From contig NC_043015.1 of the NCBI RefSeq assembly GCF_006345805.1, positions 44,578,001 through 44,642,000 of the forward strand: a stretch of 64,000 bases of DNA. Direction: 5' to 3'. This DNA comes from Octopus sinensis. Lineage: Eukaryota. Made by a program: the position numbers and the translations under genes. This document shows, one piece after another, positions 21,731-63,055 of this stretch. The notes beneath the pieces were generated by a model. The model was given only the letters and a program-made list of their open reading frames with translations, ran no database searches and was not told where the DNA came from. How positions within the stretch are numbered: position 1 is the stretch's first letter; every line of letters begins with the position of its first letter.

Positions 21731-21889
21731 AATGATGACTTAATTAATGAAGATAGATCGTCTATGGCACAGCAGAATCAAATGAGCTGCTAGGATGGTT
21801 CTTCAAAGACACGATAAGAACTAAATACGTGATTCAATCCCCCAACGCTGTTTTTCTGAGTTTGATGCAATAGCGTAATAGAGTAATAG

Positions 21890-22108
21890 GGCGGCGGGCT
21901 GACAGAATCGTTAGGACGCCGGGAGAATTGCTTTGTGGTGTTGTTCGTCTGCCGTTACGTTCTGAGTTCAAATTCCGCCAAGGTCGACTTTACCTTTCAT
22001 CCTTTCGGGGTCGATTAATTAAGTACCAGTTACGCACTGGGGGCGATGTAATCGACTTAATCCCTTTGTCTGCCCTTGTTTGTCACCTCTATGTTCAGCC
22101 CTCTGTGG
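21890..22108 (+). mobile_element. SINE family B
   Basis: GGCGGCGGGCTGACAGAATCGTTAG...GTTCTGAGTTCAAATTCCGCC...TTTCGGGGTCGAT. Confidence 0.85.
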
Positions 22109-22151
22109 ATGTATATGTTTATTTATTTAGACATATATTATATATAGTAAA

Positions 22152-22402
22152 GGCGCGTGGTTTAGTGGTTAGGGTGTCAGCATCATGCTCGTAAGATTGT
22201 GGTTTTGATTCCTGGACCGGGCGATGCGTTATTTTCTTGAGTAAAACACTTCATTTCATGTTGCTCCAGTCCCCTCAAATGGCAAAAATGCGTAACGCTG
22301 CGATGGACTGGCGTCCTGTCCAGCTGGGGAACACATACGCTATTGAAACCGGGAAACCGGGCCTATAAGCCTGGCTAGGCTTTAAAAGGGCGGATTTATT
22401 TT
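22152..22402 (+). mobile_element. tRNA-derived SINE with V-domain-like core
   Basis: tRNA-like head related to family D; GCGATGGACTGGCGTCCTGTCCAG at 22300-22323 resembles the V-SINE central domain. Confidence 0.65.
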
Positions 22403-22451: not shown

Positions 22452-22548
<97 letters not shown>

Positions 22549-22566
22549 ATATATTATATATATATA

Positions 22567-25500
22567 TAACTTAGAATAACTTAGAAAGGTTTTTGGCCAG
22601 TATTGGCCCAGGCCATGTCTAACTTTATAGCACCACCTGGCGAAGTCTTTCAGTTCAGGATTTGGGCACCAAGGCCCATTCGAGCAGAGAGTTATTGTTT
22701 GCGGAGACATATCCGGGTGTGGGTGGTTTGTCCGGTACTGTTTGAAGGAATTTGTCCAAAGACTTCTTGAATTTTGTGTGGTCAGTTTCTTTTTTGACGT
22801 GTCCTGGTGTAATGTTGAAGAGAGCAGGTCCAATGAGGTGAAATAGTTGTGCCGTATTGTCGTTATGTGATGCGATTTAGATTTTTGTTGTGGACGGATG
22901 GCACGTGGTCCAAGCCTTGGATGCATTTTGAAGGTGATGCCAACATCATTCGGACAGTGCTGATGGAATATTTTCCACATCATACAGATAATGTAGCGTT
23001 CACGGCGTCGTTGGAGTGAATACATTTCAGCTTCTTTAGTCTACCTCAGTAGTCAAGGTCTGACATGCCATCTATCTTTTTTGTGATTGACCTTGGGGAG
23101 CTTCAATTCTCATAATATTTTGTTTTGTGTAGGGAGACCACAGTGGACAGCAGTATTCAAGGTGGGTCGGGCAAAAGTGGAGAAGAGAAGGATAATAGCG
23201 TGGGAATCTCTCGACTGGAAGGTTCTGAGAATCCAGGAACACATTCTGCGGGCCATGTCAACTTTGCTGCTTATATGTGTAGCCCAGCTTATGTTGTTGT
23301 CCACTGTTACTCCCAGGTCTCTGATGTTGTTGGATGCAATGAGAATTTCTCCAGAAGGAGAGAGTATGGGAGTTTCAGAGCGTCCTCCCTTCCAAAGTGG
23401 ATCAGTTCGAATTTGTCTTCATTTAGCAACATGTTATTCTTTTCCGCCCATTGGACAACAGCCAGTAGGTCTGACTGAAGGTTTATTCGGTCATCCACGC
23501 CATTGATGACCTTCTGGAGCTTGGAATCATCAGCGAAGGTTCTGATGTTGCTGTGTTTGATGGTGTCAGTAATATCATTTATGTAGATGATGAAGAGAAG
23601 TGGGCCCAACACAGTGCCTTGTGGGACACCACTGCTGACTTTGGCTGGGCTAGATTTGACTCCCTCGACTACAACATGTTGGGTTCTGTTAGAGAGGAAG
23701 CACTTGATCCATTGCAGCAGCTTTCCAGTGACACCAATATTGGACAGCCTTCTCAGAAGGATCTTATGATCAACCCTGTCAAAGGCCTTGCTGAAATCAA
23801 GGTAGATGACATCAGTGTTGGAACCCTCTCCCAAGGCTCTCAAAATGTCATCAAAATGATGCAGTAGCTGCGTCAGGCAATCTCTCCCATTACGGAATCC
23901 ATGCTGGTTGGGGTTCAGCATATTATGACTCTCAAGGAAGTGAGTCATACGCGATCTCAGCACCCTCTCAAATACCTTGATGATATGAGAGGTGAGTGAG
24001 ATTGGACGGTAATTCACGGCAAGTGATTTGTTTCCTTTTTTGAAAACTGGGACAACAGACTGGGATAGAAGATCTTCTGGTATATATCCAGCATCCAGTG
24101 AGTTCCGCCACAGATTGGCTAGAGGGGGTGCAAGTTGGCTTTGACACATCTTCAAGACACAAGCAGGGAACCTATCGGGACCTACTGCTGAATTATGCTT
24201 CATTTCCTTTATTGCTGCTAAGACATCAGGAGCGCCAAATGTTATGTCCGATAAAGTGTATTGGGGAGTAACATCACTGATACAGCCCAGATCAGTTATA
24301 TCAGGATTGCTGAAAACAGAGCAATATTGTTTCTGCAATATTTCTCCCATGGTTTTGGCATTGTCTTGAAGAGTACCATTTTCATCAATCAGAGGGCCAA
24401 CAGTAGAACCAGTGACTCTGTGTTTTTTTGCAAATGAAAAGAACACTTTGGGATTGAGTTTGATCTTCTCAATGGCCCAGGCCTCTTCAGCTCTTCGCTG
24501 ACTATTGATGATAGACATCATGTTGTTTTGGAGTTTATGTTTTTTAATCTCTAGCGACGAGATGGCAGTCAGGTTGGTGTGTTGCTGTTGACAGTATTTC
24601 AGCATGTTGATCTTTTTGTTGATTCTTTTAATTTTCCTTATGAGAGATTTTCTATTTCTAGGGATTCGACACTTAGATTTGTTTGCAGATCTTAATGGGG
24701 TGTGTCTTGCACATATGTTCGTGATGGTGTCTACAAGTGACTGCCAGGACTTTTTGATGTTAGTGGGTGTGTATGTGTGCGTGAAGGACCAATCGACTTG
24801 TGCAAGATCATTATTGATCGCTTCCCAGTTTGCATTGTGGAAATCCATAGTGTCAAATGGATGAACAGGAGGGATGACATTTGTTTTGCATTTTGGCCAG
24901 TGAAATCTCATATCACAGAGAACCATGTCATGGTCGGAGAGTAGGGTTTTCTCCACTGCAATATTGTGGATAGTATCAGTGTGATTGCTGAAAATTATCT
25001 AAGACGTTTTTGTGACATCTCGTTGGTTCGAGTACCAGTTGGGACAAGAAGAGTCATCCATGAAGTCAAGAAGCGATTCCACTGCCTCCCTGTCAGGGGT
25101 TGAGAGAGAAGAACCTGGCGGCAGACTGTTTGTAGACCAGTCAACCCGGGAAGGTTGAAATCTCCATCATTAAAATGTTGTCAGGTTGACACTGCTGATG
25201 AAACACTTTATGCTGTTGAGGCATTCCTTGAAGCATGGTAGGGGCGTTTGGGGTGGTCTGTAGAGCCCAACTACTGTTAAGTTGTTGGTTTGACTGAATA
25301 CAGCGACTGCTTCGCAGTATCCATTCGAAAATATGTTCATGGCTTCTGTTGAGAATGAATCATGGACATAAATGGCAGTCCCACCCTGTCTTCTGCCAAC
25401 ACGATCAGCACGAATGGTTTTGAAACTTTTAACTTTCACCTCGGCTTCCAAGTGGAGGTCACTAAGATGGGTTTCAGTGAGGACGAAGAAAGGGATGTGG

Positions 25501-25645
25501 TTTGGATGGGCCTCGACCCAGTCCTCCAGGAATCTTATCTTCCATTTTTGTGTATTGGTGGAAGGGCTGATGCCTTGGGCATTAAGCAGAAATGTTGAGG
25601 CGAGAGTGGATGGTTTTAATTGTTTTGGTGATTTGTTTATTTGAT
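22567..25645 (-). mobile_element. CR1-group (CR1/L2-like) LINE, ORF2 essentially full-length but disrupted
   Basis: APE endonuclease motifs (LLNAQGI, LTETHL, GGTAIYV, GDFNLP across a frameshift, SDH); RT motifs; C-terminal SLQRRRERY; tail TAAGTTATTCTAAGTTA running into (TA)n. Confidence 0.95.
23307..24956 (-). pseudogene. LINE reverse transcriptase segment (549-aa open stretch)
   Basis: NYRPISLTS, YLDFSKAFDRVDH, GVPQGTVLGPLLF, FADD; frameshifts at about 25170 and about 23310. Confidence 0.95.
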
Positions 25646-25691
<46 letters not shown>

Positions 25692-26750
25692 AGTTAGTAT
25701 TCACTTAATATATATCATATTATATATGATCCATGTATTTCTGGAATGTAAAATAATACGTTACTACACAAGCAATTACGAGAACATAAAAACGTATTTT
25801 CTGAAACGATAGACGTATAGATTCCTAAAGATATATATGTTGTTTCTCATTCTTTGACTTACAGAATCAAACATGTCCACACAGTAATACATGCACACGA
25901 ATAAAGAAGCATATTATCAGTATCATACACACATATACTTATACCGAGAAGGATCATTCTCAACGTATATAAGTTAGATGCTGTTACCACTTATTTCTTG
26001 GGCATTTTCATTCACGTGATGCTGTTACCGAATCCTGCAGTCTTTCGAGCGAGCTCTATATGTTTGGGATCCAAAGAATGCTCGTTCATCGACAGAGAAA
26101 TCCTTTATTGTTATGTAAATGGTTATATAAAACATAATGGTAGTTTTTTTTCTGGTTAAGTGCATTCTTCAAAATCTCTTGATTTATTTTACATTTTATT
26201 TCTGTAAGAAGAACAGATGTGAGAGCGTATTTGAAGTTAAGGCAAAAAAGCTACAGAGATAAATACGATAACGTATTATTCTGATAACTCTAATGGATCG
26301 TTTGTACATTTATCTTCCATTTTTTTTTTGCTATTTTGGCTGAGAAGTGGAAATGGTTTTCTTTCTTTTTATTATTTTTTTTTGTCAAAATCCACAACTG
26401 ATGAGGTTGATGCGTACAGTATACTTGTTGATCCCCTCTTAGTCGATACTAAGTAAACACAAGGGCCACTCTGTAGTTTCTGTAAATTTAAAGAACAAAA
26501 CCGGATACGGCAAAACGTTTGCAGCAGAATCAAGACTATAGGTAAAGAAAGCATGAAAGAATATTCCAGTAAACAGAATACTGAAAAATGCGGCCTGGAA
26601 GCTACACAAGTGACATTCGAAAGGGCCAGATCTATTTCCAGCAATACTGACAGAAGAAAACCGCGTACATAAATGCGGTGTATAGCAGTGCTTGGGCGAT
26701 GTTATCAGGCTAAATGATTGACTGTATCGAATTCGTAGCTGTATTTTACA

Positions 26751-32295: not shown

Positions 32296-33184
32296 TTAAA
32301 CGATCAAGCTTCAGAACGAAATATATCTTTGCACCCACAAACTAAAGAACGTTGATGTTAAAAGAGGCATCTAAATGTAACCCAAGTCCCTTATCTTTAA
32401 ACAATCAAAAACCCTAATATATTCAAAATATTTCTAACTAATAAAAATCAGAAACAAATGAACTGCGCTGAGGAGATGAATGAATAATGCAAGACTTCCA
32501 TCGCACATACAAACGAATCTGACAATTTCTTGATTGTTTTACAATTCACTCTCCTGGCGGCGAATGATTTCATTACGACACAAGTTTCGAATAGAATGCG
32601 TAATGTGGATAATACAATACAGCGCCGCGCAATGAGCCTGGTCATGTCCACACAACATTCATGTTATGTCATCTGGTAAAAGTTTTCAAAGGCAGATTAA
32701 TTTAGTTCTGAGCAATGTTCATTAATTTTTGATTTCTTCATTCATTACATATTTGCAGACAAAAAACAGTTTTATTTTGTATGGTTTTACTGACCAGGAA
32801 TTAGTATTGATTGCAACTGTTGAGAGTGATACTGGTCACGCTTATTGAGAACGTGTAATTTGTCGTCTGAATAAAAAATAGGTGAGCTGGAGAAGAATTT
32901 CAGGAAGCAAACGAATATCTAACAAAGAAGGATTGGGTTCCGTTGATATTTGGATAGCTAGTGAATGGATATACATAGTGTACGAAAAGAAGATAAGCCA
33001 TACATGCCGAGACAGAGATTGTTACCGATCTTAATCAGTAACAAGTATTACATTCGGTATTTAAGATTATTCATTTCAGGTATCAAGAGAGAGATCTTGA
33101 GAAAGACATTTGTGGTATACTCAATTCAACTTCTTTAAAGTTATAACATGTTATTTAAGTGTCAGTAAATTGCGTAAGATAAAT

Positions 33185-33603
33185 AGGCGCGGGAGTGGCT
33201 GAGTGGTAAGTAGCTTGCTAACCAACCACATGGTTCCGGGTTCAGTCCCACTGCGTGGCATCTTGGGCAAGTGTCTTCTGCTATAGCCTCGGGCCGACCA
33301 AAGCCTTGTGAGTATATTTTGGTAGACGGAAACTGAAAGAAGCCGGTCGTATATATGTATATATATATGTATGTGCGTGTATGTTTGTGTGTCTGTGTTT
33401 GTCCCCCTAGCATTGCTTGAAACCGATGCTGGTGTGTTTACGTCCCGGTCACTTAGCGGTTCGGCAAAGGATACCGATAGAATAAGTACTGGGCTTACAA
33501 AGAATAAGTCCCGGGGGTCGATTTACTCGATTAAGGGTGGTGCTCCAGCATGGCCGCAGTCAAATGACTGAAACAAGTAATAGAGTAAAAAAGAGTAAAG
33601 AGT
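33185..33603 (+). mobile_element. Full-length SINE family A flanked by a ~180-bp direct duplication
   Basis: Head GGCGCGGGAGTGGCTGAGTGG, complete tail; flanks 33004-33184 and 33604-33781 are about 93% identical. Confidence 0.9.
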
Positions 33604-34514: not shown

Positions 34515-35065
34515 TGGCAGAAGGCGATGAACTGGTAGAAACGTTAGCACGCCGGGCGAAATGCGTAGCCGTATTTCGCCTGCTATTACATTCTGAGTTC
34601 AAATTCCGCCGAGGTTGACTTTGCCTTTCATCTTTCGGGGTCGATAAATTAAGTACCAGTTACGCATTGGGGTCGATGTAATTGACTTAATCCGTTTGTC
34701 TGTCCTTGTTTGTCCCCTCTATGTTTAGCCCCCTGTGGGCGATAAAGAAATAAGAAACGTTAGCATGCCGGGCGAAATGCTTAGCAGTATTTCGTCTGCC
34801 ATTTCATCCTGAGTTCAAATTCCGCCGAGGTCGACTTTGCCTTTCATCCTTTCGGGATCGATTAACTAAGTATGCACTGTGGTCGATATAATCGACTTAA
34901 TCCATTTGTCTGTTCTTGTTTGTCTTGTCTGTATTTCGTCTGCCGCTACGTTCTGAGTTCAAATGCCGTTTCGGGGTCGATAAATGAATTACCAGTTGCG
35001 TTCTAGGGTCGATCTAATCGTCTGGCTCCTTTTCCCAAACTTTCGGGCCTTGTGCCTAGAGTAGA
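34515..35065 (+). mobile_element. Three tandem or nested family-B SINEs
   Basis: GAAACGTTAGCA.GCCGGGCGAAATGC...GAGTTCAAATTCCGCCGAGGT.GACTTTGCC repeated. Confidence 0.85.
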
Positions 35066-36439
35066 AATGTATATCTGGGACGTTATTTTGCCATGCAAAC
35101 TTACGAGGACATGGAAATAATATACAAATTCATTGGGTTCATTGAAAAGGATAATTCAACAACGTGTTACTAGAGCCACTTGGATGTACACAATTTGTAA
35201 TTTTCCTGCTAATTCCAACATTTGCTGATGTAAAACTCGCTAAGCAGCACGCTGTATCCATAGACTGAATTTCGTTTATGCTTTTACAATCATTCCTGCT
35301 ACGTTTTGCAAATTAAGCTGCGTAAGGCAATTTGCAAATACTGCTAAGTGCGGCTGGGTTTCCTCTTTGATTTTTCATTAACACGTCGGTCGAGGCAGAT
35401 TCTCAATTGCATTAGTTGCCTAAATATTCTCTCCTAGAAACAATAACATTTTCCATATTGTCTGACAGAACGCACAAAATTAATACAAATACATACATGC
35501 ATACCTGCATGTGTGTATATATAAACATGCTTCCCAGTTTGCATGCACGTTGTATATTTCCAAATACAAACATACATACATATATACATATATATATGTG
35601 TGTGTGTGTGTGTGTATATATGTATATATATGTAGATATATGTATATATAATTATGTGTGTCTGTGTCTGCGAGTATGTTGTTTGTGTTTGTATATGTAT
35701 ATATATACCTATATATACGTGTGTATATGTGTGCGAGTCTGTTGTTTGTGTTTGTATATGTATCTGCCTTATCTGTGTGTTTGTGTGTGTAACTAAAGAA
35801 CGGTAAAGAAGGAGATGTTCCTACACGACCTAGGACTTCTGTGTTAGTAATAATAGATAATAACGTTTAAATAGTAAACGTTGTTAAGCTGTGGACTGAA
35901 TGGAATCCTCATCAGAATAATAGAATAATGATGATCGATCAACTATTTGTTAGTATTGGTAGCTAAAATAAGTAATTGGATTTTCTATTCTTTATCGTTT
36001 TGTTGTTACTGTTGTTGTTGTTCTGATTAAAAAAAAAGGTAAGACGAAAATTTAAAAAAAAAGAAAAAAAAAAGAAAAAAGAAAATGGAAAAGAAATCTG
36101 CTTAAATCAATAACGTGAGAATATAATGGGGTTACAAAGTGGATTGGAGATGTTTGAGAGGCATAGATAATGGGCGAGTAATAGATGGCATTGAACGTTC
36201 TCCCTGCATGTTTTGAAAGGTATTGTAACAGAAGTTATATTGTCATATTATAATGTATTATTCAATTTCGTTAAAAGCTCTCCAAATAATATCAGGCTGC
36301 TGGTTTTCTACTTTAACAAAAAAAAAAGACAAAAAAAACAACAAATAAAATAAAACCTACCTAATCGATGAAATGTATAATGCCTGACATTATTATTTTG
36401 GGAATTATTTTTGTTGCTGTTATTACTAAGAGCATTAAA

Positions 36440-36495
36440 CATTACAACAGTTATTATTATTATTATTATTATTATTATCATTATTATTATTATGT

Positions 36496-36553
<58 letters not shown>

Positions 36554-36592
36554 CTTTATTATTATTATTATTATTATCTTTACTATCATTAA

Positions 36593-36625
<33 letters not shown>

Positions 36626-36960
36626 CTTTATTATTATTATATTATTATTATCATTATCTTTATTATCATTATCTTTATTATTATTATTATTATTATCATC
36701 ATCATTATTATTATTATTATTACCTTTATTATTATTATTGTTGTTGTTGTTATTTTTATTATTATCATCATCATCATCATCGTCGTCGTCATCGTTATTA
36801 TTTTTGCAGTGGTTGATGTTGTTGTTATGGTGATGTTATTTATTATTGCTAATTTTATTATAATCTTGCTTCTTCTTATTATTATTATCATGTCTTCATC
36901 ACCATCATAATTGCCATCATCACAAACGTCATTATCATCATCATTAAACCATTATTTTTT
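36440..36960. repeat. (ATT)n/(ATC)n compound microsatellite
   Basis: Directly visible. Confidence 0.95.
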
Positions 36961-37570
36961 ATCTATTATTTTAAAGCGTTTACGTTATGGTTTTTCATTA
37001 GTACTGATATTTTTGTTCTCATTGCCAGACTCATGTTTCCGATGCAATAAAATTTAGGCAAACAGTTGTTAACGAATTACGTGAATAATATTTTTGTGTC
37101 ATTAATATTTATTTAGTTATTATTTTGGTTTCTTTTCTATTAGACAAAATTCACAGGTGTGTAAAACTGGGTAAATCTTCGTCCTGAGGGAGGTTTAAAT
37201 TATTACGTCTGTGTCTATAAAAGACGGATGACATTCTTTTATTATCTTCTTTCATAATATACGCTATTGCAAAAATAGGAGAATTACATGAGCAGTTCAG
37301 CCGAGAAGCAAATGTTAATACGTGCCTTCGCAAATATATTTGGAATCTTAAAATTAAATTTTAACAAGTTATTGATTCTATTTTCTCTTCCTTGTATTCG
37401 AAGATTCTAATCCACAAAAGTAATGGCTCTTGTAATATCGACAACGCATAAGTTAAACGGCAAATATATTTAAGAAGAAGGCTACATACGAGTAATGCGT
37501 ATATCGTCATTTATGGCAAATTTCAAAAGATGAGCACTTGAATCATTAAAGTCCACAATGGAGAAAATTA

Positions 37571-37635
37571 TTGGGTTGTCCGGAAAGTTCGTGCCTATTT
37601 ATAGTAGCTTACGTTTCGACTTATTTTAGAACATT
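37571..37635 (+). mobile_element. Mariner left-end fragment
   Basis: TA-TTGGGTTGTCCGGAAAGTTCGTGCC matches the TIR at 62489. Confidence 0.85.
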
Positions 37636-38289
37636 AGCATAAAGAAGTCAGGAAGGGTAAACCATTACAGCGGGGAGGAAGAAAATGTATTTATTTTTCT
37701 TGTTTTTTATCCGCTACTATGAAGCAGACATGTCGTATGGTCGCTAGACTTTCTAGTAAAACAATGAAATCGCTTGATTATGAAACCTTACCGCTATGAA
37801 GGAAGGGAAGACGCATTGAATCATCGAGTCCAATGCATGAATCGTAAGTCGGTACGGTGACTATCGAAATGATATTGCTTCGTCGTTGCTAATATGGGTT
37901 TCAAATTTTAACTCATGGCCAACAAGTTTGGAGGAAGGGGTGAAATGTACTGTAGTACAACTGGAAAGATATATTGTTCAACGTCTAAGTACTGATGGCT
38001 GGTTGCTGACAGATTTTTCTGCTCTGTAAGGATTTAATCCAACATATGCTGTTCTATCTCTACGCATTGAAAAATATATCATTCTACTTGGACTACAATA
38101 CATTTCAGCATTTCAACAACAAATTTATATTTGCTTACATATGACGTAATTACTAATTTTACGTTTTATTTTATTGCTCAATGTATTTTAGGGAGAAAAT
38201 GATAATTAATAACGCTATAAATCGAAAATTTTCAGACAAATTACGCTTCATATTAGCCCGAACAGAAGGCAGAATTCTAATGAGGTTAA

Positions 38290-38428
38290 TGATAAAGATG
38301 ATGACAATGATGTTCATTATGGTGGTGACAACAAATATGACACCAAAGGTGACAATGATGATGATGAGGAGGAGGATGAATCATGATGATGAACATGATG
38401 ACGATAATGATGACGATGATGATGTAGT

Positions 38429-38459
<31 letters not shown>

Positions 38460-38534
38460 GATAAAGATGATGATGATGATGATGATGATGATGATAAAGA
38501 TGATGATGATGATGATGATGATGATGACGATAAA

Positions 38535-38565
<31 letters not shown>

Positions 38566-38641
38566 TAGTTGATGATGATGATGATGATGACGATAAAGAT
38601 GATGATGATGATGATGATGATGATGACGATAAAGATGATGA

Positions 38642-38672
<31 letters not shown>

Positions 38673-39146
38673 ACTGGTGAGGATGACGACGTCATGATGA
38701 TCATGATGACTTCGATTATAGTGATGTCGATAACGATGATAATGATGAAAATATGGACGATGTCGGTGATGATGATTATGATGATAATGATGATGGTGAT
38801 GAAGAAGGAAGAGGATAAGAATGAGGAGAAGATGAGATGAAGGAGGATGGGAAAGGCGAGGAAGGAATGGAAGAAAAGTCGTAAGAAGAAAATCGAAAGG
38901 GAAGGAGACGAAGAAGAAGTAAAAGAAGAAGTAGAAGAAGAAGAAGAAGAAGAAGAAGAAGAAGAAGAAGAAGAAGAAGAAGAAGAAAAGAAGAAGAAGA
39001 AGAAGAAGAAGAAGAAAAAGGAGGAGAAGAAGAAGAAGGAGGAGGAGGGGGAGAAGGAGGAGAAGAAGAAGGAGGGGAGGAGAAGAAGGAGAATAATAAT
39101 AATAAGATGATGATGATGATAATGATGATGATGATAATGATGATGG

Positions 39147-39183
<37 letters not shown>

Positions 39184-39190
39184 AAGACAG
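38290..39190. repeat. (GAT)n and (GAA)n compound microsatellite block
   Basis: Directly visible; explains the poly-D/E/K/S ORFs. Confidence 0.95.
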
Positions 39191-39541
39191 GGATGATGAC
39201 GGAAAACAAAATAAATAAACAAAGAAAGAAAGAAAGGAAGAAATTTCGGGTCTCCTGCCTAGATTAGAAAAGGATATTTCCATATAATAATGATTGTGAC
39301 GATACTTATAAATATGGCGACGACTATGGTTTTCGACGATATTGACTACGTTGAAGATTTTGACAGAGAAGTGAACTGCTATTGCCAACAAGTGGCTTTA
39401 TTTTCCCCTTTTTCTTTTTCATAATTTTTAATTGCAAAATTCTTGATCTTCACCCAAACTGAAAAATCAAATAGATTGGAGATAAAACAAAAAATTATTT
39501 TCTCAAACTTTAGCACACAGGCATTCTATAATAACAACAAC

Positions 39542-41598: not shown

Positions 41599-41699
41599 TA
41601 TTATTATTATTATTATCATTATAATTATTATCATTATTATCATTATTATTATTATTAATGTTATTATCATTATTATTATTATTATGATTTTGAATTTTT

Positions 41700-41890
41700 G
41701 GCACAAGGCCAGTAAGATCGGTGAGGGTATTAAATCTATTACGTCGACCCCATTACTCAACTGGTAATTATTTTATGGACCCCGAAATGGATGAAAAGGA
41801 AAGTAGGACTCGGTGGAATTTGAACTCAGTACGAGATATGCTGCGAAGCACTTTGTCCGGCGTGCTAACGATTCTACCATCTCACTGCCT
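41700..41890 (-). mobile_element. SINE family B, decayed
   Basis: GACCCCGAAATGGATGAAAGG...CGGTGGAATTTGAACTCAG...CCGGCGTGCTAACGATTCT is the reverse complement of family B. Confidence 0.75.
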
Positions 41891-41934: not shown

Positions 41935-42902
41935 CAAGAAAGAGGAAGGAAGGAAAGAAGAAGAAGAAGAAGAAGAAGAAGAAGAAGAAGAAGAAGAAGA
42001 AGAAGAAGAAGAAGAAGAAGAAGCATAACTTAGAGATGAATTAGAAGAATGATAAAAAGAAAGAACTAGTAATAAGAGGAAGAAGGACGAGGATGAGAAG
42101 AAAGCGGATATAATGAAGAAAGAGGACACCTTGCGCAATCGTTAATGCCATGAATATCAACACAATGAAGTGAAAGAAGCGGGGAAGAAAAGTCATTGAG
42201 AAATATAAGGGGAAAGTAGACTTCACGCGTTAGTTTTAAACAGCTGTGCTTTCTTACCCGTCTAAGTGCCAGAGCATTCTACCCACAGGAACATCCATAA
42301 CGTAGAATCTGCATGACATAGTCTTTGAGACATATGTCACCTTTTTGTTATTGTATAATTTCTGTGCACCCTTATGCATACCCAATGTATTGATCGACTC
42401 GAGCCTATAGAAAATGAGACCACTCGGTTGGAACGAATCCGGGGCCGTATGTCTGCAGAGCGTAATCTTAACATCTCGGTCATACTCAATTTACATTAAA
42501 GATATATAAATAACATGAATGGAATATTAAAACCGAAGAGGACATCATATTAAAATTTCGTCGCTAAGATACAATGCATTAGTTTGTATGAAGAGTGACG
42601 ACAATTCTTCGGACGAATAAAACAGTTTCCCTGCAGTACAAAACCATATTAATAAAGAATTAGTTAAAAATACGATAGAAAGTATATGCTGTATTGACCA
42701 ATAGTAACAAAAGTAAGCAACATTGTTTAGACACAGAGGACCGAAAACTGTACCATGAAACCGGGTGCAATTATCATAATCTGATAAGGAATCTATAATT
42801 TTCTGAATTCTATACTCAGTGTACCCTACAATGCACTTTTATATATATCGTTGTTAGAGCGTATGCATAAGGAAGTTTGGTGGAAATAATTACCGAGGAA
42901 CT

Positions 42903-43411
42903 ATGCAAATAAATATTCGTTTAGTAAAAGTGTTGTGCACTCGAAGTATGTCGCAGCAGAATTCTGCAAATAAAGCATCCAAATATGCAAATGCTATTCC
43001 AGCTACTCCGAACAGAAGGATATAAATGAATAACCTCGCTCATTCTGTCAAGGTTACAGAAGAATAGTGTATGTAAAGTCAGCCACCGCGAGAGACAGGT
43101 TTAATATGCATATTAAATCCAAGGTAATTAGAGCGTATGTATGCAAATTACAGCTCCATTTCTAACCAGGTAATTATGCTAATCAGGTACCCTCTAAAGA
43201 CTAAGTATGCAAATTCTGGACCACTGAGAAAGTGCGAGTATATGAATGCAGTGAGGAAAATATACTTATTCGTTACCTACAATTAAAGGGAAAAGATTTA
43301 AATTAATTAAAGTGTAATTATAATGAGCGGGAGCATGCAAATTATGTATCCGCTTCTAAACGCGTAAAACGCAAATTAGTCTCTATATTCTAAGAGTCAG
43401 AAGACGCAAAT
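42903..43411 (+). promoter_or_regulatory. Homotypic cluster of POU/octamer motifs, candidate enhancer
   Basis: Exact ATGCAAAT at 42903, 42985, 43141, 43207, 43335; variants CTGCAAAT 42964, ATGCATAT 43106, ATGCTAAT 43176, ACGCAAAT 43369 and 43404. Confidence 0.55.
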
Positions 43412-43489
43412 TACAGCCACGCTATTAAGGACTTATTTGAGTGAACACCAGGTACGGTTACCGTCAGAGTGACATTTTTTTGAATTGGG

Positions 43490-43690
43490 AAGGTGATCTG
43501 GCAGAATCGTTAGCACGCCGGGCGAAATGTTTAACAGTATTTCGTCAGCCGCTACATTCTGAGTTCAAATTCAGACGAGGTCGACTTTGCCTTTCATCCT
43601 TTCGGGGTCGATTAAATAAGTACCAGTTAAGCACTGGGATCCACATAATCGACTTAATCCGTTTGTCTGTTCTTGTTTGTCCCGATGGGT
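43490..43690 (+). mobile_element. SINE family B
   Basis: CTGGCAGAATCGTTAGCACGCCGGGCGAAATG...TTTCGGGGTCGATTAAATAAGTACCAG. Confidence 0.85.
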
Positions 43691-44363
43691 AAAGATTAAT
43701 TAAATGAAATATTATGAAACGATTGTACTACACTACCTTTGGATATCCTTGTTGCTTATTCTGATTTTATATATATATAACAGACTTCTTTTCAGTCTCC
43801 ATCTATAAAATCCACTCACAACGCTTTGGTCGACTAGAGACTATGTTAGAAAACACATGCCGAAGCGGGACTGAACCCGGAGCCATGTGGTTCGGATGAA
43901 TGCTTCTTGTAATTTGTTCAGAAAAGTTACTTGCAGCTAATGTTTGTGTACTTTGTCAAGGAAATACAGACACGCGGAAAAACAGACACACACAGACACA
44001 TACACACATACATACACACAAATACGCATACACAATAACACACACCACCCTGAGAAATACAAAACAAATAGACACACTCACACAAGCACACCCACACGTA
44101 AATAATTATAAATAATTATAAATTTATTTTACGCCTTATTTTGAACACTTTCATGTTGACTGTTGAAGCAAAAAGGCCCACTTAACATTTTCTTATCATT
44201 CATTGTCATAGATTCTACTTTGTAACATTTTCTTATCATTTTCAAAGACAGTATAACTTTATTTTAATACAACTGTGATAACCAGTTTTTAACATAAGGC
44301 TTATACAAAGCTTTACATTTTACTTTTGATTATCTTTTATTTAAAAAGAAAAGTGGCATTTTC

Positions 44364-45021: not shown

Positions 45022-45994
45022 GTGTGTGTGTGTTTTACTCCACACAGACATGCCTGCGCTTATGATAGGGGTTATTGCTATTTGGAAGCATTAAGGTATC
45101 ATCTAACGCCACAAACACTATGATAGGCTTCTGCAGTTAGATAACTTAAGAACACTAAAATAACATGTTGATGCACAGCATAATATCATTCATTCCACTT
45201 GTGTTTTGTTATTATCATTCTTGTTCTTATTGTTGCCGATTATTTTAGACTTTAAATGACATTCCCGTTGTATTCAATTTGAAATTTAATTTTAATTTTA
45301 TTATTTATGTTTGATTGATTACCGTTTTCTTAAACAAACATCATGTTTTGGTTTTGTTGTTCTCCGCATCCTACCGATATTGTTTTTCCCATACTATGCT
45401 GTTCTTCGTATCTGCATTGATATCATTGTTGATCTTATTTCTAATCACGTCATTTATCAAGTTATTTACACTGGAGGATTGCAACGCTGGCACCACGTTG
45501 ATTATTTTCTAATGGGATCACAATCAAAGAGATAGTGACACAGTTAATTTCTACGTGCTACTTTATTATTATAGTTACTGCTATCATAGTTATTTGCCTT
45601 TTGCTTTTCGTTTGAAAATTTTCATTCTTCTGTTATTTTAGAGAGAGTTCTTTCTATTTCCTTTCAGCTCATTTTTTTTTACGGTTGGGTAGCCGAACCA
45701 CTGTTCCATAATACTTGATTGCGCTCATTCTCTTTTAAGTTTTTCTGATCATACACGAAATGTTTTCATTTCTCTTTTTTTTTTCTGCCATGTTTTAAAT
45801 TTTACGACAAACGCTTTTCGTTTCTTTGTTCTTTTCCTTCGTCAGCAACCCAACTCTTCCTCTAACCCCTTTTCTATTAATATAGAAAAAAAAACTACAA
45901 TAGGATATTTAAAAAATCCCACAATGTTATGAAAGAAATACTTTGCTGCATTTAGTTTTCTCTCTGTATGTTTTGAGTTCAATACTTGCCAAAT

Positions 45995-46012
45995 ATATTT
46001 CACGCTTCCCTG

Positions 46013-46086
<74 letters not shown>

Positions 46087-46335
46087 TATTATAATCATCA
46101 TCATCATCCATCATCATCATCATTATTATTATTATATTATTATTATTATACATTATTATTATTCATCATCATCTTATTATTATATCATCAACCATCATCA
46201 TTATTATTACCATTATTATTAATATTATTATTATTATTATCACCATTATTATTATTATTATTATTATTTTTATAATCATCATCATCATCATCATCATCTT
46301 TATTGTTATTATTATTATAATCATCATCATCATCA

Positions 46336-46370
<35 letters not shown>

Positions 46371-46405
46371 ATCATCATCATCATTATTATTATTATTATT
46401 ATTAT
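45995..46405. repeat. (ATT)n/(ATC)n microsatellite, tail of the adjacent SINE
   Basis: Directly visible. Confidence 0.9.
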
Positions 46406-46855
46406 TGAGTGAGAGAGTAACACATGCCATCAAAGTGACACAGAGGTACAATTATACGAAACCTAATATACGCATCATGACTCCGTGTCTGGTAATGATA
46501 CACCAGGCACATACATCACAACCACATGTGCGCGACATGTTGACCTTATATCAAGATAAACAGCGCATGACCTTGCAGGTACGACACAGTTAGAATTTTC
46601 TTCAGGTTAAATAACCCATCTCATTCAAAATGTCCCTGAATAAGGTTGTTTAATGGTGATGAACGAAACACCCATGTTTCCAGAGGTGAATCACTCAAAC
46701 CCCAAAGAATCCCGGTTAACACATGGCTATGATGCTCCCCAAATACTTCTGCTCGTGATCAGAGATGCGGAAATCGTCAGCCACTAAGGGACATGCTTAC
46801 GTGATTAAGGTCAAACAACTGACAAGCAAATCAGTGGCATTGAACAGAATATTTA
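46405..46855 (-). mobile_element. SINE body with Deu/Nin-domain-like core (tentative)
   Basis: Minus strand GATTTGCTTGTCAG...GGCTGACG...TCTCTGATCACGAGCAGAAGTA...GGAGCATCATAGCCATGTGTT, ending in an (AAT)n tail. Confidence 0.55.
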
Positions 46856-53520: not shown

Positions 53521-53759
53521 TTGTCGTGCATGGGCAGTATTAATGAAGAAATGTAAGTGCTCTGGTTGACCTTTTGAAAAATATATGTTACAATGCTTGA
53601 ACAATTTCTATTGATGAAACAAAATAATCAATATGTATAATGGCTATTTTGTCAATAAACTAACAATTATGTACGAATGTCTTCGTACAGTTATTTCATT
53701 TTTACTTCGCGTTCAGAAGAATTATCCTCCATTTTTCTCCCGTTCCATAACTACTTTGT

Positions 53760-53774
53760 TTATGTTGTTGTTTC

Positions 53775-53806
<32 letters not shown>

Positions 53807-53850
53807 TAATAGCAATAATAATAATAATAATAACAATAATAATAATAATA

Positions 53851-53898
<48 letters not shown>

Positions 53899-53903
53899 GT
53901 TAA

Positions 53904-53942
<39 letters not shown>

Positions 53943-54001
53943 CATTGTCATCATTATTATTTTTATTATTATTATTATTATTATTATTGTTGTTGTTGTT
54001 G

Positions 54002-54042
<41 letters not shown>

Positions 54043-54060
54043 GTAGTTGTTGTTTGTTTT
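53760..54060. repeat. (AAT)n to (ATT)n switch microsatellite (self-complementary)
   Basis: AAT run 53775-53850 immediately followed by an ATT run. Confidence 0.9.
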
Positions 54061-54605
54061 GATGTCGTGACTATTATTATTGCTATTACCATCGGTTTTA
54101 GTACTCGTAATGATTATTGTTTTCAATATTATTCTTGTTGATTAAGGTTGCGAGCAGGCAGAACCTGCTTAGTTGCATTTCATCCGTCTACACGTTCTGA
54201 GTTCAAGTTCTGCAGAGGTCGACGTTACATCACTTCATTTCGGAGGGTCATTAATTGATACCAGATGAACACTAGCCCTCAATGTAAGCGATAACCCCCT
54301 TCCCCTAAATTTACTGGCTGCACAGATATGAGGTTACTAATGTCTCAAAGAAAAGAATTATTACTCCAAAGGTAGGTAAAAAAAGGCAAAATGGTAGTCT
54401 GGGAACTAAAAAAAAAACGATTATAAATGTGCAGACAGCTTTAAACTTTAACATTCAGACAGCAAAATATAATGCTTATTTCATTGGAATGTTTTCAATT
54501 AATCATGTATTTTATGCTTGAACTTATGAACATGGAGTTTGAGAAAACAATATTGTCCAACAATGCTCGCATATTTATATATGTATATATGACTATATAT
54601 GCGTG

Positions 54606-62488: not shown

Positions 62489-63055
62489 TTGGGTTGTCCG
62501 GAAAGTTCGTGCCGATTTATGTAGCTTACTTTTGATTTATTTTAGAACGTTGTTGGTCCATAAAATAGGATTTGAGTACCCCTCCATTTATAGCACAGTT
62601 TAAAGCTATCTTTTCATGGGAAGAAGATTTATGTTCCTATAATCTATGTTTAATTCCGTAACCCTTTAAAATGGAAGATAAGAAAGTTCATTTTCGGCAC
62701 TTGATGCTTTGGGAACCAGAGAAAAATTGCTGCAGCTCGGCTGGGATGTGTTACCCTACCCTCCATATTCACCAGATATTGCTTCTTTGGATTTCCACTT
62801 ATTCAGGTCTCTCCAGAATAGTTTTAATGGTAAAAATTTCAATTCCTTGGACGACGTAAAAAGATACCGTGATGAATTCTTTGCCATGAAACCACCTCAA
62901 TTCAGGGAAAGAGGATATTTTCAAGTTAAAGGAAAGATGGGGACGCATTGTGCAACAAAATGGTTCATAGTTGGTTGATTAAAAATGTAATGGCAAGTAT
63001 TTATTGACCTTTTTCTTTCCTTTAAAAATCGGCACGAACTTTCCGGACAACCCAA
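62489..63055 (+). mobile_element. Internally deleted mariner (Tc1/mariner) element, 567 bp
   Basis: Perfect 30-bp TIRs TTGGGTTGTCCGGAAAGTTCGTGCCGATTT, TA at both ends; transposase N-terminus MEDKKVHFRHLML fused to the C-terminal LGWDVLPYPPYSPD-IASLDFHLFRSLQN segment. Confidence 0.95.

What the first reader, a model, noticed from the sequence alone, without database searches (positions are those of the whole stretch)
42903..43411. Dense same-strand cluster of POU octamer sites
Seen: five exact ATGCAAAT and five one-mismatch variants in 510 bp, all co-oriented. Also a perfect 16-bp palindrome TTAATATGCATATTAA (43101-43116), several TAATTA homeodomain sites, and a loose repeat unit (..ATGCAAATTACAGC..CT..TAA). 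My rough expectation at this base composition is far below one exact octamer per 500 bp. Established: ATGCAAAT is the canonical POU-domain site. Inference: a POU-driven (likely neural) enhancer built by degenerate tandem amplification, or a high-avidity binding platform of unknown role. It lies in one of the longest repeat-free stretches (42200-43480).
Basis: partly seen in the sequence, partly recalled or inferred. Interest (0 to 1): 0.7.

Follow-up and report, generated by a model that had tools for sequence, protein, structure and literature searches.

The report
Old tandem array of POU octamer sites
A 600-base non-coding stretch of this cephalopod-type genome carries about eleven same-direction copies of the classic POU-factor binding word, left over from an old 35-base tandem repeat, and its one diverged sister copy has kept little besides such binding words, so it is a good but untested candidate gene switch.

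Summary
There are five exact ATGCAAAT and six one-mismatch variants, all on the + strand, in 42903-43411. Local background predicts 0.025 exact sites (P about 7e-11).

The sites sit on the remains of a 33-35 bp tandem repeat, with autocorrelation peaks at 35, 70 and 105. The unit spacers have drifted almost to randomness, while the octamer columns stay 87% identical.

The stretch is not a multicopy TE or satellite. It hits only itself in the 2.72 Gb genome, whereas the neighbouring SINE gives more than 10,000 candidates.

I found one diverged paralogue on another chromosome (C1:46.75 Mb). It has the same 35 bp array, with 3 exact and 7 near octamers, all co-oriented. It shares a 29 nt TAATTA-rich block and shares no flanks. 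The words the two copies share are almost all octamer- or TAATTA-containing.

The genome encodes an Oct-1-like class II POU domain, plus class III and IV genes.

Best reading: a homotypic POU/homeodomain site cluster built by tandem duplication and kept by selection, most likely a distal enhancer. Binding, activity, tissue and target are all untested. No coding sequence lies within ±100 kb, and no orthologues could be retrieved. The main rival is a functionless relic.

The parts
42880..43480 (+). Whole element: about 600 bp of non-coding sequence, low-copy in this genome, homologous to L038 positions about 280-900 (C1:46.75 Mb). Boundaries are approximate.
   Evidence: Hits only itself in G000. 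Pairwise blastn, MAFFT and shared k-mers against L038. The flanks are not homologous. No ORF with Pfam or protein relatives.
42903..42910 (+). Exact octamer ATGCAAAT (context CTATGCAAATAAAT)
42964..42971 (+). One-mismatch octamer CTGCAAAT. It shares the 16 nt context GAAYTNTGCAAATAAA with the site at 42903.
   Evidence: family D5
42977..42984 (+). One-mismatch octamer ATCCAAAT, abutting the next exact site
42985..42992 (+). Exact octamer ATGCAAAT
43100..43117 (.). 18 bp perfect palindrome TTTAATATGCATATTAAA. It reads ATGCATAT on both strands, with TAAT/ATTA on either side of a central ATGCAT. It is a possible POU dimer site; this is recalled from the literature on palindromic POU sites and was not tested.
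   Evidence: (I1)
43106..43241 (+). Sub-array A: four units of 35, 35, 31 and 35 bp, starting at the octamer-like sites 43106, 43141, 43176 and 43207
   Evidence: Lax TRF finds 43135-43216, period 31-33, 2.5 copies, 66% matches. Unit table.
43141..43148 (+). Exact octamer (GTATGCAAATTACAGC)
   Evidence: D1, D9
43176..43183 (+). Variant octamer ATGCTAAT, directly preceded by TAATTA (GGTAATTATGCTAAT)
43207..43214 (+). Exact octamer (TAAGTATGCAAATT; the same 14-mer occurs twice in the paralogue L038)
43293..43321 (+). Block conserved between the paralogues that holds no octamer: AAGATTTAAATTAATTAAAGTGTAATTAT. It holds two TAATTA homeodomain-type words.
   Evidence: blastn against L038 641-669: 86% over 29 nt, E 2e-5. 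Signature searches.
43332..43349 (+). AGCATGCAAATTATGTAT: an exact octamer (43335-43342) plus flank, 17 of 18 identical to L038 700-717
43335..43438 (+). Sub-array B: three units of 34, 35 and 35 bp, each reading (A[TC]GCAAATTA)-N9-11-(TTCTAA / ATTAAG)
   Evidence: Lax TRF finds 43317-43413, period 34-35, 2.8 copies, 65-72% matches. Unit table.
43369..43376 (+). One-mismatch octamer ACGCAAAT (AAAACGCAAATTA)
   Evidence: D8
43404..43411 (+). One-mismatch octamer ACGCAAAT (GACGCAAATTACAGC; it shares GCAAATTACAGC with 43143)
   Evidence: D8, D9
43492..43684 (+). Not part of the element: a SINE copy that bounds it on the 3' side. It served as the positive control for the repeat searches.
   Evidence: 10,468 first-look candidates; copies 90-94% identical on many chromosomes

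Best explanation
The element is a homotypic cluster of POU-domain binding sites with accompanying TAATTA homeodomain-type sites. It was built long ago by tandem duplication of a roughly 35 bp unit whose core was (T)ATGCAAAT(TA). Selection on the binding words has kept it since, while the spacers drifted.

Proposed mechanism (inferred). Monomers of an Oct-1-like (class II) or class III POU factor occupy the 7-11 sites, with the POU-specific domain on ATGC and the POU homeodomain on AAAT. The palindrome may take a dimer. The 31-35 bp centre-to-centre spacing lets all sites be filled at once. High site density would give high occupancy and a threshold-like response, and the array would act as a distal enhancer on a gene more than 100 kb away.

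Shown here: the sites, their excess, their co-orientation, the tandem origin, the low copy number, word-selective retention within the array and between two old paralogous copies, and the presence of matching POU genes.

Inferred only: binding, enhancer activity, target gene and tissue.
For: Site excess: 5 exact sites and 11 with at most one mismatch on one strand, against 0.025 and 0.59 expected. 0 of 20,000 local-model simulations exceed 3 sites.

Tandem origin: autocorrelation peaks at 35, 70 and 105, with at most 1 of 1000 shuffles reaching them.

Uneven decay within the array:
- Octamer columns are 87% identical between units, against 55.7% for the other 27 columns. Shuffled units give 51.1%.
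- After masking the octamers the periodicity is no longer significant.
- The flanks of the sites are no more alike than random positions.

Not a repeat family: it hits only itself in G000, while the adjacent SINE gives 10,468 candidates.

One old paralogue, L038 (C1:46.75 Mb):
- It has 3 exact and 7 near octamers at 33-36 bp spacing, all on one strand.
- It shares a 29 nt block without an octamer (E 2e-5) and an 18 nt block.
- It shares no flanking homology.
- Shared same-strand 9-mers number 23, against 6 for the reverse complement and 2.9 +/- 2.2 for shuffles. They map almost only to octamer- or TAATTA-containing words.

POU genes: G000 encodes a class II POU domain that matches the human Oct-1 POU domain solved on an octamer site (1OCT, E 1.3e-65), plus class III and IV genes.

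Literature: octamers act as POU-dependent cis-elements in an invertebrate (PMC2841177). Homotypic site clusters are a common feature of enhancers and promoters (PMC4621482).
Against: There is no direct evidence of binding, open chromatin, transcriptional effect or target.

No orthologous sequence could be obtained, so conservation rests on two paralogues and on units within arrays. Both comparisons are partly ascertained through the motif: L038 was found with an octamer pattern, and the units were anchored on octamer-like words.

In L038 only 3 of 10 sites are exact. Variant units such as ATGGAAAT x3, and ACGCAAAT x2 in the focal copy, look inherited by duplication, so site counts overstate the number of independent events.

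No coding sequence lies within +/-100 kb, and no POU or homeobox gene was found on this chromosome.

Co-orientation is explained by tandem duplication alone. Homotypic clusters can also arise without adaptation (PMC4621482).
Confidence: 0.45

Rival explanations
1. Functionless relic. An old low-copy repeat (a minisatellite, perhaps once carried by a mobile element) happened to have ATGCAAAT in its unit. What is seen now is neutral decay plus later local duplications of variant units.
For: The 35 bp periodicity and two recognisable sub-arrays. Variant units shared by neighbours (ACGCAAATTA x2 in the focal copy; AATTATGGAAAT x2-3 in L038) show continued duplication. Many satellites and minisatellites of this genome contain octamers: co-oriented triples number 3837 against 583 for the reversed-pattern control, mostly in tandem repeats. 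The element lies in a repeat-rich region with no coding sequence in 264 kb. The motif-conservation tests are partly ascertained.
Against: Uniform decay cannot give 87% identity in 8 columns when the other 27 columns are within about 5 points of shuffled controls. Nor can it give 11 near-perfect sites where 0.59 are expected. A second copy, diverged almost to noise outside short blocks, keeps the same words in the same orientation. No other copies exist that would mark a once-abundant family.
Confidence: 0.3
2. Architectural or insulator-type platform. The array is bound not by POU factors, or not only by them, but by a multi-zinc-finger or other architectural protein that reads a longer word such as (A)AGTATGCAAATTA. 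It would work like the 12-site Su(Hw) array of the Drosophila gypsy element.
For: The architecture is close to the gypsy insulator: 12 co-oriented sites with a TGCATA core in 340 bp, separated by AT-rich spacers (PMC2374998). Some conservation extends beyond the octamer: A at -3 carries 1.2 bits, T at -1 carries 0.7 bits and A at +2 carries 0.7 bits, in 21 sites from both loci. The element is a discrete, dispersed unit of about 600 bp with two copies on different chromosomes. It lies far from any coding sequence.
Against: There are no matches to the full 12 bp gypsy Su(Hw) consensus; only 3 sites per locus fit the 8 bp core. From memory, Su(Hw) is an arthropod protein. The most conserved word is precisely the canonical POU octamer. 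Flank conservation can be residual homology.
Confidence: 0.1
3. Subterminal transposase-binding repeats. The array is one end of an ancient DNA transposon whose transposase recognised a word that coincides with the octamer.
For: The pattern fits: multiple short co-oriented motifs at irregular spacing within about 500 bp, with unrelated spacers. The element is discrete and present at two unlinked loci without shared flanks.
Against: No mirrored cluster on the opposite strand within +/-100 kb. No terminal inverted repeats were found. No transposase ORF lies next to it. Only two copies exist in 2.7 Gb. Dead transposon ends would not keep their motifs while the spacers randomise.
Confidence: 0.05
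4. RNA-level site array. The + strand is part of a non-coding transcript, and the repeated word is a binding site for a small RNA or an RNA-binding protein (a 'sponge'). That would also demand strict co-orientation and would conserve only the core.
For: Strict strand bias: 21 of 22 sites in the two loci are on one strand, binomial P 1e-5. Only the core is conserved, with free spacers.
Against: There is no evidence of transcription. No Rfam family matches in the window. Co-orientation follows from tandem duplication. The palindrome and the TAATTA block have no place in this model. The word is the textbook DNA site of POU proteins.
Confidence: 0.04

Closest known systems
[quoted passage not shown]
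   Same: Many sites for one factor lie within a few hundred bp, far above chance. Tandem duplication is a plausible route of origin. Expected properties are high occupancy, a threshold or graded response, and robustness to loss of single sites.
   Different: No activity, binding or chromatin evidence exists here. The site density is unusually high and strictly one-stranded (about one site per 50 bp, at a 31-35 bp period). The cluster lies more than 100 kb from any coding sequence.
Octamer (ATGCAAAT / ATTTGCAT) elements bound by POU-domain factors, e.g. the Oct-1 POU domain on its site (PDB 1OCT) and the CEH-6-dependent octamers of C. elegans promoters (PMC2841177)
   Same: The word is the identical 8 bp one. 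The variants ATGCTAAT and ATGCATAT are also present. The genome encodes a POU domain nearly identical to Oct-1 across the solved region.
   Different: Known natural octamer elements are mostly single or double sites near promoters (immunoglobulin, H2B and snRNA genes; from memory). Here there are 5 exact and 6 near sites in an array, with no snRNA, histone or other gene nearby.
The gypsy retrotransposon insulator of Drosophila: 12 Su(Hw) sites in 340 bp (PMC2374998)
   Same: It is an array of about a dozen co-oriented sites with a TGCATA core, at a period of about 30 bp, separated by variable AT-rich spacers, on a discrete dispersed element.
   Different: The site consensus is not met (0 full matches). 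No LTR-retrotransposon context was found. The binding protein family is not expected in molluscs (from memory). Insulator function is untested.
Decayed minisatellite (VNTR-type tandem repeat)
   Same: It has a 33-35 bp period, sub-arrays of 2.5-2.8 copies, and variant units shared by neighbours.
   Different: Unit identity is too low for standard TRF settings. The decay is strongly uneven, sparing the octamer. The unit is not a genome-wide minisatellite family.

Membership tests
Homotypic TF-site cluster / enhancer | Several sites for one factor within a few hundred bp, significantly above background | tested here: met
   5 exact sites and 11 with at most one mismatch in 561 bp, against 0.025 and 0.59 expected. 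It is the only such cluster in 264 kb.
Homotypic TF-site cluster / enhancer | Sites conserved more than the surrounding sequence | tested here: inconclusive
   Met among repeat units (87% against 56%) and between the two paralogues. Both comparisons are partly ascertained through the motif, and no orthologues could be retrieved.
Homotypic TF-site cluster / enhancer | Factor occupancy, open or active chromatin, and reporter activity | not testable with these tools
   No chromatin, expression or binding data are available.
POU octamer element | Canonical ATGCAAAT word | tested here: met
   Five exact copies, plus ATGCTAAT and ATGCATAT variants.
POU octamer element | A cognate POU factor is encoded by the organism | tested here: met
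   A class II POU domain at C18:34.99 Mb matches the Oct-1 POU domain structures at E 1.3e-65. Class III (C7219) and class IV (C13) genes are also present.
POU octamer element | Association with a promoter of a known octamer-dependent gene type (snRNA, histone H2B) | tested here: not met
   No Rfam family or tRNA in the window. No histone or other coding ORF in the window or within +/-100 kb.
Multicopy transposable element or satellite | Many similar copies in the genome | tested here: not met
   The focal element and its upstream flank hit only themselves. L038 hits only itself. The signature patterns find only the two loci. The positive control, the neighbouring SINE, gives 10,468 candidates.
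Multicopy transposable element or satellite | Terminal inverted repeats, a partner end, or coding capacity | tested here: not met
   No terminal inverted repeats. No mirrored cluster within +/-100 kb. No ORF with a Pfam hit.
Tandem repeat (minisatellite) | Head-to-tail periodic units | tested here: met
   Lags 35, 70 and 105 are the top autocorrelations, with 0-1 of 1000 shuffles reaching them. Lax TRF finds sub-arrays.
Tandem repeat (minisatellite) | Units recognisably alike along their whole length | tested here: not met
   Default TRF finds nothing in 42200-43480. Non-octamer columns are 55.7% identical against 51.1% for shuffled units.
gypsy-type Su(Hw) insulator | About 12 clustered co-oriented sites in about 340 bp | tested here: met
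   11 sites in 509 bp, 31-35 bp period within the sub-arrays. Compared with PMC2374998.
gypsy-type Su(Hw) insulator | Sites fit YRYTGCATAYYY | tested here: not met
   0 full matches in either locus; 3 matches per locus to the 8 bp core.
gypsy-type Su(Hw) insulator | Su(Hw) orthologue present; location in a retrotransposon 5' UTR | not tested
The nearest reverse-transcriptase ORF is a LINE 18 kb away.

The most novel reading that the evidence does not exclude
The two loci may be the only survivors of an ancient mobile element that the host has kept as high-avidity landing pads. One version is a gypsy-insulator-like architectural or boundary element in gene-poor DNA. Another is a POU-factor hub or sink that sets nuclear POU availability. 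Either would differ from a conventional tissue enhancer.
Probability: 0.1. Interest if true: 0.75.

Novelty: new member of a known kind. Interest (0 to 1): 0.42.

Why it matters
To my knowledge, few if any cis-regulatory elements of cephalopods have been functionally dissected. I did not search the literature for this systematically.

This element gives a compact test object of about 600 bp that is simple to mutate. It holds eleven sites for one deeply conserved factor class, plus a natural diverged 'replicate' on another chromosome that has kept the same words.

If it is active, it would show a regulatory module made by tandem duplication of a single binding site and maintained for a long time. 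It would also give a handle on POU-dependent regulation in an animal with a large, independently evolved brain.

If it is inactive, it is a useful warning that perfect textbook motif clusters can be repeat relics.

Tried and rejected
Orthologue retrieval failed. The 97 aa ORF just upstream found no relatives among 5.8 billion proteins. Two ORFs inside the cluster are not on record in any assembly.

A covariance/sequence model of the unit array (R1) could not be run on this genome.

Pattern searches for more family members:
- GCAAATTA x3 at unit spacing gave only TA-microsatellites besides the focal locus.
- TATGNWAAT x3 gave 497 hits against 1069 for the control, nearly all TA-rich microsatellites. 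Among the listed hits, which run only from C1 into C4, L038 was the only complex array.
- The 18 nt block alone gave 4 hits against 2 for the control.

Ideas rejected:
- Autoregulatory enhancer of a nearby POU gene or a homeobox target: no POU or homeodomain hit on this chromosome.
- snRNA or histone promoter element: no such genes.
- Segmental duplication: the flanks of the two copies share only SINEs and microsatellites, out of order.
- SOX-POU composite sites: no SOX-type word abuts the octamers (read).

Uninformative checks:
- CpG observed/expected is about 1.0 in the element and 0.94 in the window.
- Literature searches for octamer or POU cis-elements in cephalopods found nothing relevant.

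Full report
THE OBSERVATION

The window is G000:C19:44578001-44642000 of a 2.72 Gb, AT-rich genome with 13,516 contigs. Five exact ATGCAAAT words lie on the + strand at 42903, 42985, 43141, 43207 and 43335. Six one-mismatch words lie on the same strand at 42964, 42977, 43106, 43176, 43369 and 43404. The only - strand match is the second reading of the palindrome at 43100-43117. TAATTA occurs five times.

The window as a whole is not enriched: 10 sites against 7.3 expected. Only the clustering is unusual. Using the rate in the surrounding 264 kb, 0.025 exact sites and 0.59 sites with at most one mismatch are expected in 561 bp. Five and 11 are observed (P 7e-11 and 5e-11). TAATTA is expected 0.40 times against 5 observed. 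None of 20,000 sequences drawn from the local first-order composition had more than three sites.

In those 264 kb this is the only place with three or more co-oriented octamers in 500 bp. Of the 70 regions where any 8-mer recurs five or more times in 561 bp, 67 are microsatellites. The other three are this cluster, a closely spaced ATAATTAC run and a tandem SINE, so this is the only one with irregular, wide spacing.

ANATOMY

The 561 bp core has its three highest autocorrelations at lags 35, 105 and 70. At most 1 of 1000 dinucleotide shuffles reach them. Default TRF sees nothing. Lax TRF finds two sub-arrays: 43135-43216 (period 31-33) and 43317-43413 (period 34-35), with 65-72% matches. The unit reads (T)ATGCAAAT(TA)-N9-11-(TTCTAA)-N.

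The decay, however, is very uneven:
- Among seven units the octamer columns are 87% identical. The other 27 columns are 55.7% identical under an optimal gapped alignment, against 51.1% for shuffled units.
- Once the octamer-like words are masked, the periodicity is no longer significant.
- The flanks of the sites are no more alike than those of random positions.

IS IT A REPEAT FAMILY?

The core and its upstream flank each match only themselves in the whole genome. The adjacent SINE (43492-43684), used as a positive control, gives 10,468 first-look candidates with copies 90-94% identical. Within 264 kb, 42160-43480 has no blastn match elsewhere. The 35 bp unit is not a genome-wide minisatellite.

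Co-oriented octamer triples are common in the genome (3837 against 583 for a reversed-pattern control), but they are mostly true satellites.

A PARALOGUE

I inspected nine of the roughly fourteen distinct chromosome-1 loci in that list of triples. One of them, L038 (C1:46752400-46753400), has the same construction. It carries ten octamer-like words at 33-36 bp spacing, three of them exact, all on one strand and none on the other.

Pairwise blastn against the focal element gives three kinds of match:
- a 29 nt block with no octamer in it (43293-43321 against 641-669, 86%, E 2e-5);
- an 18 nt block (43332-43349 against 700-717, 17 of 18 identical);
- multi-unit matches of 59-63% identity in several registers.

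Same-strand shared 9-mers number 23, against 6 for the reverse complement and 2.9 +/- 2.2 for shuffles. They map almost only to words containing an octamer or TAATTA. With the octamers masked, the overall local-alignment score is not above shuffles (374 against 332 +/- 26).

Ten kilobases of flank on each side share only SINEs and microsatellites, out of order. The homologous unit is therefore a discrete element of about 600 bp, not a segmental duplication.

L038 also hits only itself by BLAST. A 25-position composite signature occurs only at the two loci, with 0 for the control. The 18 nt block occurs four times against 2 for the control, but only the two loci have an octamer-like word downstream. 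A degenerate three-unit pattern returned 497 hits, of which only the first 100 or so (C1 into C4) are listed; L038 is the only complex array among them. The recognisable family therefore has two members.

WHAT THIS IMPLIES

Two copies have diverged almost to noise, yet both keep about ten co-oriented octamer-type words and a TAATTA-rich block. Within each copy the units have also lost nearly all similarity except the octamer. Uniform neutral decay does not produce this. Recent amplification would leave similar spacers. A once-abundant dead family would leave many decayed copies, and would not protect the motif in these two.

The simplest reading is selection on the words themselves, that is, on protein binding.

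There are caveats:
- L038 was found with an octamer pattern.
- The units were anchored on octamer-like words.
- Some variants (ACGCAAATTA x2; AATTATGGAAAT x2-3) are inherited by duplication rather than kept independently.
- No orthologous sequence could be obtained.

WHICH PROTEIN?

ATGCAAAT is the canonical POU-domain site (established knowledge; Oct-1 POU domain on an octamer, PDB 1OCT). It is used by POU factors in invertebrates too: CEH-6 in C. elegans (PMC2841177).

The genome encodes a class II POU domain at C18:34.99 Mb that matches the solved Oct-1 POU-domain structures at E 1.3e-65. The printed alignment, to the Oct-1 chain of 1O4X, is near-identical across the POU-specific domain and the homeodomain. 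It also encodes class III (C7219) and class IV (C13) genes. A POU factor is thus the most economical candidate. The exact word best fits classes II and III (from memory).

Some conservation just outside the octamer (A at -3, T at -1, A at +2) leaves room for a protein that reads a longer word.

CONTEXT

No tRNA or Rfam family lies in the window. No credible coding ORF lies in the window or within +/-100 kb; there are only LINE and mariner remnants. No POU or homeodomain hit was found on this chromosome. If the element is an enhancer, it acts at long range or from a very large intron.

COMPARISON WITH WHAT IS KNOWN

The closest kind is the homotypic cluster of binding sites, a common feature of enhancers and promoters that can also arise without adaptation (PMC4621482).

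The closest look-alike in architecture is the gypsy insulator: 12 co-oriented Su(Hw) sites with a TGCATA core in 340 bp on a mobile element (PMC2374998). The Su(Hw) consensus is not met here, with 0 full matches, so this is a resemblance in design and not membership.

The element is not a promoter-proximal octamer of the snRNA or H2B type, and it is not a multicopy TE or satellite.

VERDICT

The tandem origin and the motif-selective retention are shown in silico. POU binding and enhancer function are plausible, and I rate them at about 0.45. The neural role is unsupported. The main rival, a functionless relic, I rate at about 0.3.

The element is a new member of a known kind. Its interest is moderate, mainly as a clean experimental handle on cephalopod cis-regulation.

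Noticed in passing
G000 loci L024 (C12463:95.2 kb), L026 (C8481:30 kb), L027 (C8853:211 kb), L029 (C8851:125 kb), L030/L031 (C12597:43 kb and 126 kb); further hits on C12468, C12762, C10060, C9311, C9497: Besides canonical class II, III and IV POU genes, the genome holds at least five kinds of short (216-241 aa), uninterrupted, strongly diverged ORFs. Each has both a Pou domain and a Homeodomain above Pfam cut-offs, and all are on unplaced contigs. Published surveys (PMC4245813) recover only the canonical POU families in molluscs and no POU1, so this looks like a lineage-specific POU expansion. Some pairs may be haplotigs. Their DNA specificity is unknown and bears on which factor reads the array.
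   Followed up: partly
G000:C1:46752689-46753189 (L038 290-790): This is the only recognisable paralogue of the focal element. It has ten co-oriented octamer-like words at 33-36 bp spacing, four TAATTA words, and is unique by BLAST. It lies between a (TA)n and a (CATA)n microsatellite.
   Followed up: yes
window 35290-35345: A second unique stretch lies 7.5 kb upstream. It holds two near-octamers in extended contexts resembling the units (TTTGCAAATTAAGC and the palindromic AATTTGCAAATACTGC), with six one-mismatch + strand sites in 35093-35490 but no exact octamer. It may be unrelated.
   Followed up: partly
window 43492-43684 and 43760-43910; also about 21874-22191, 33150-33520, 34520-35070, 41690-41880: These are copies of a very abundant SINE (more than 10,000 first-look candidates genome-wide; copies 90-94% identical). 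One copy abuts the 3' edge of the octamer element.
   Followed up: partly
window 22540-25700 (- strand): A LINE remnant. It has a 563 aa open frame with a reverse-transcriptase domain (RVT_1, E 6e-30). Upstream lies a frame with a weak endonuclease/exonuclease/phosphatase match (20.4 bits, below the 24.5 cut-off).
   Followed up: partly
window 62682-62975 (+ strand): A 98 aa frame reading ...PYSPDIASLDFHLFRSLQNSFNGKNF... looks like the C-terminal part of a mariner-type transposase (recalled from memory). It has no Pfam hit at E 1e-3.
   Followed up: partly
window 36300-39400 and 45840-46410, 53660-54140: Long trinucleotide microsatellites (ATT, GAT, AAG and similar) create stop-free frames of 100-340 aa made of I, N, D, S, K or L runs. 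These are artefactual 'ORFs', not genes.
   Followed up: no
G000:C1:207642768-207650517; C1:96305317-96306338 and C1:154409102-154409449; C1:47072649-47072845: Octamer-bearing satellites: a 114 bp satellite array of at least 8 kb, an 85 bp satellite at two loci (unit starts ATGCAAATTAGGGACTCC), and a 27 bp minisatellite (ATGCAAATTACTACTCTACCAAGACGA). They dominate any genome-wide count of octamer clusters.
   Followed up: no
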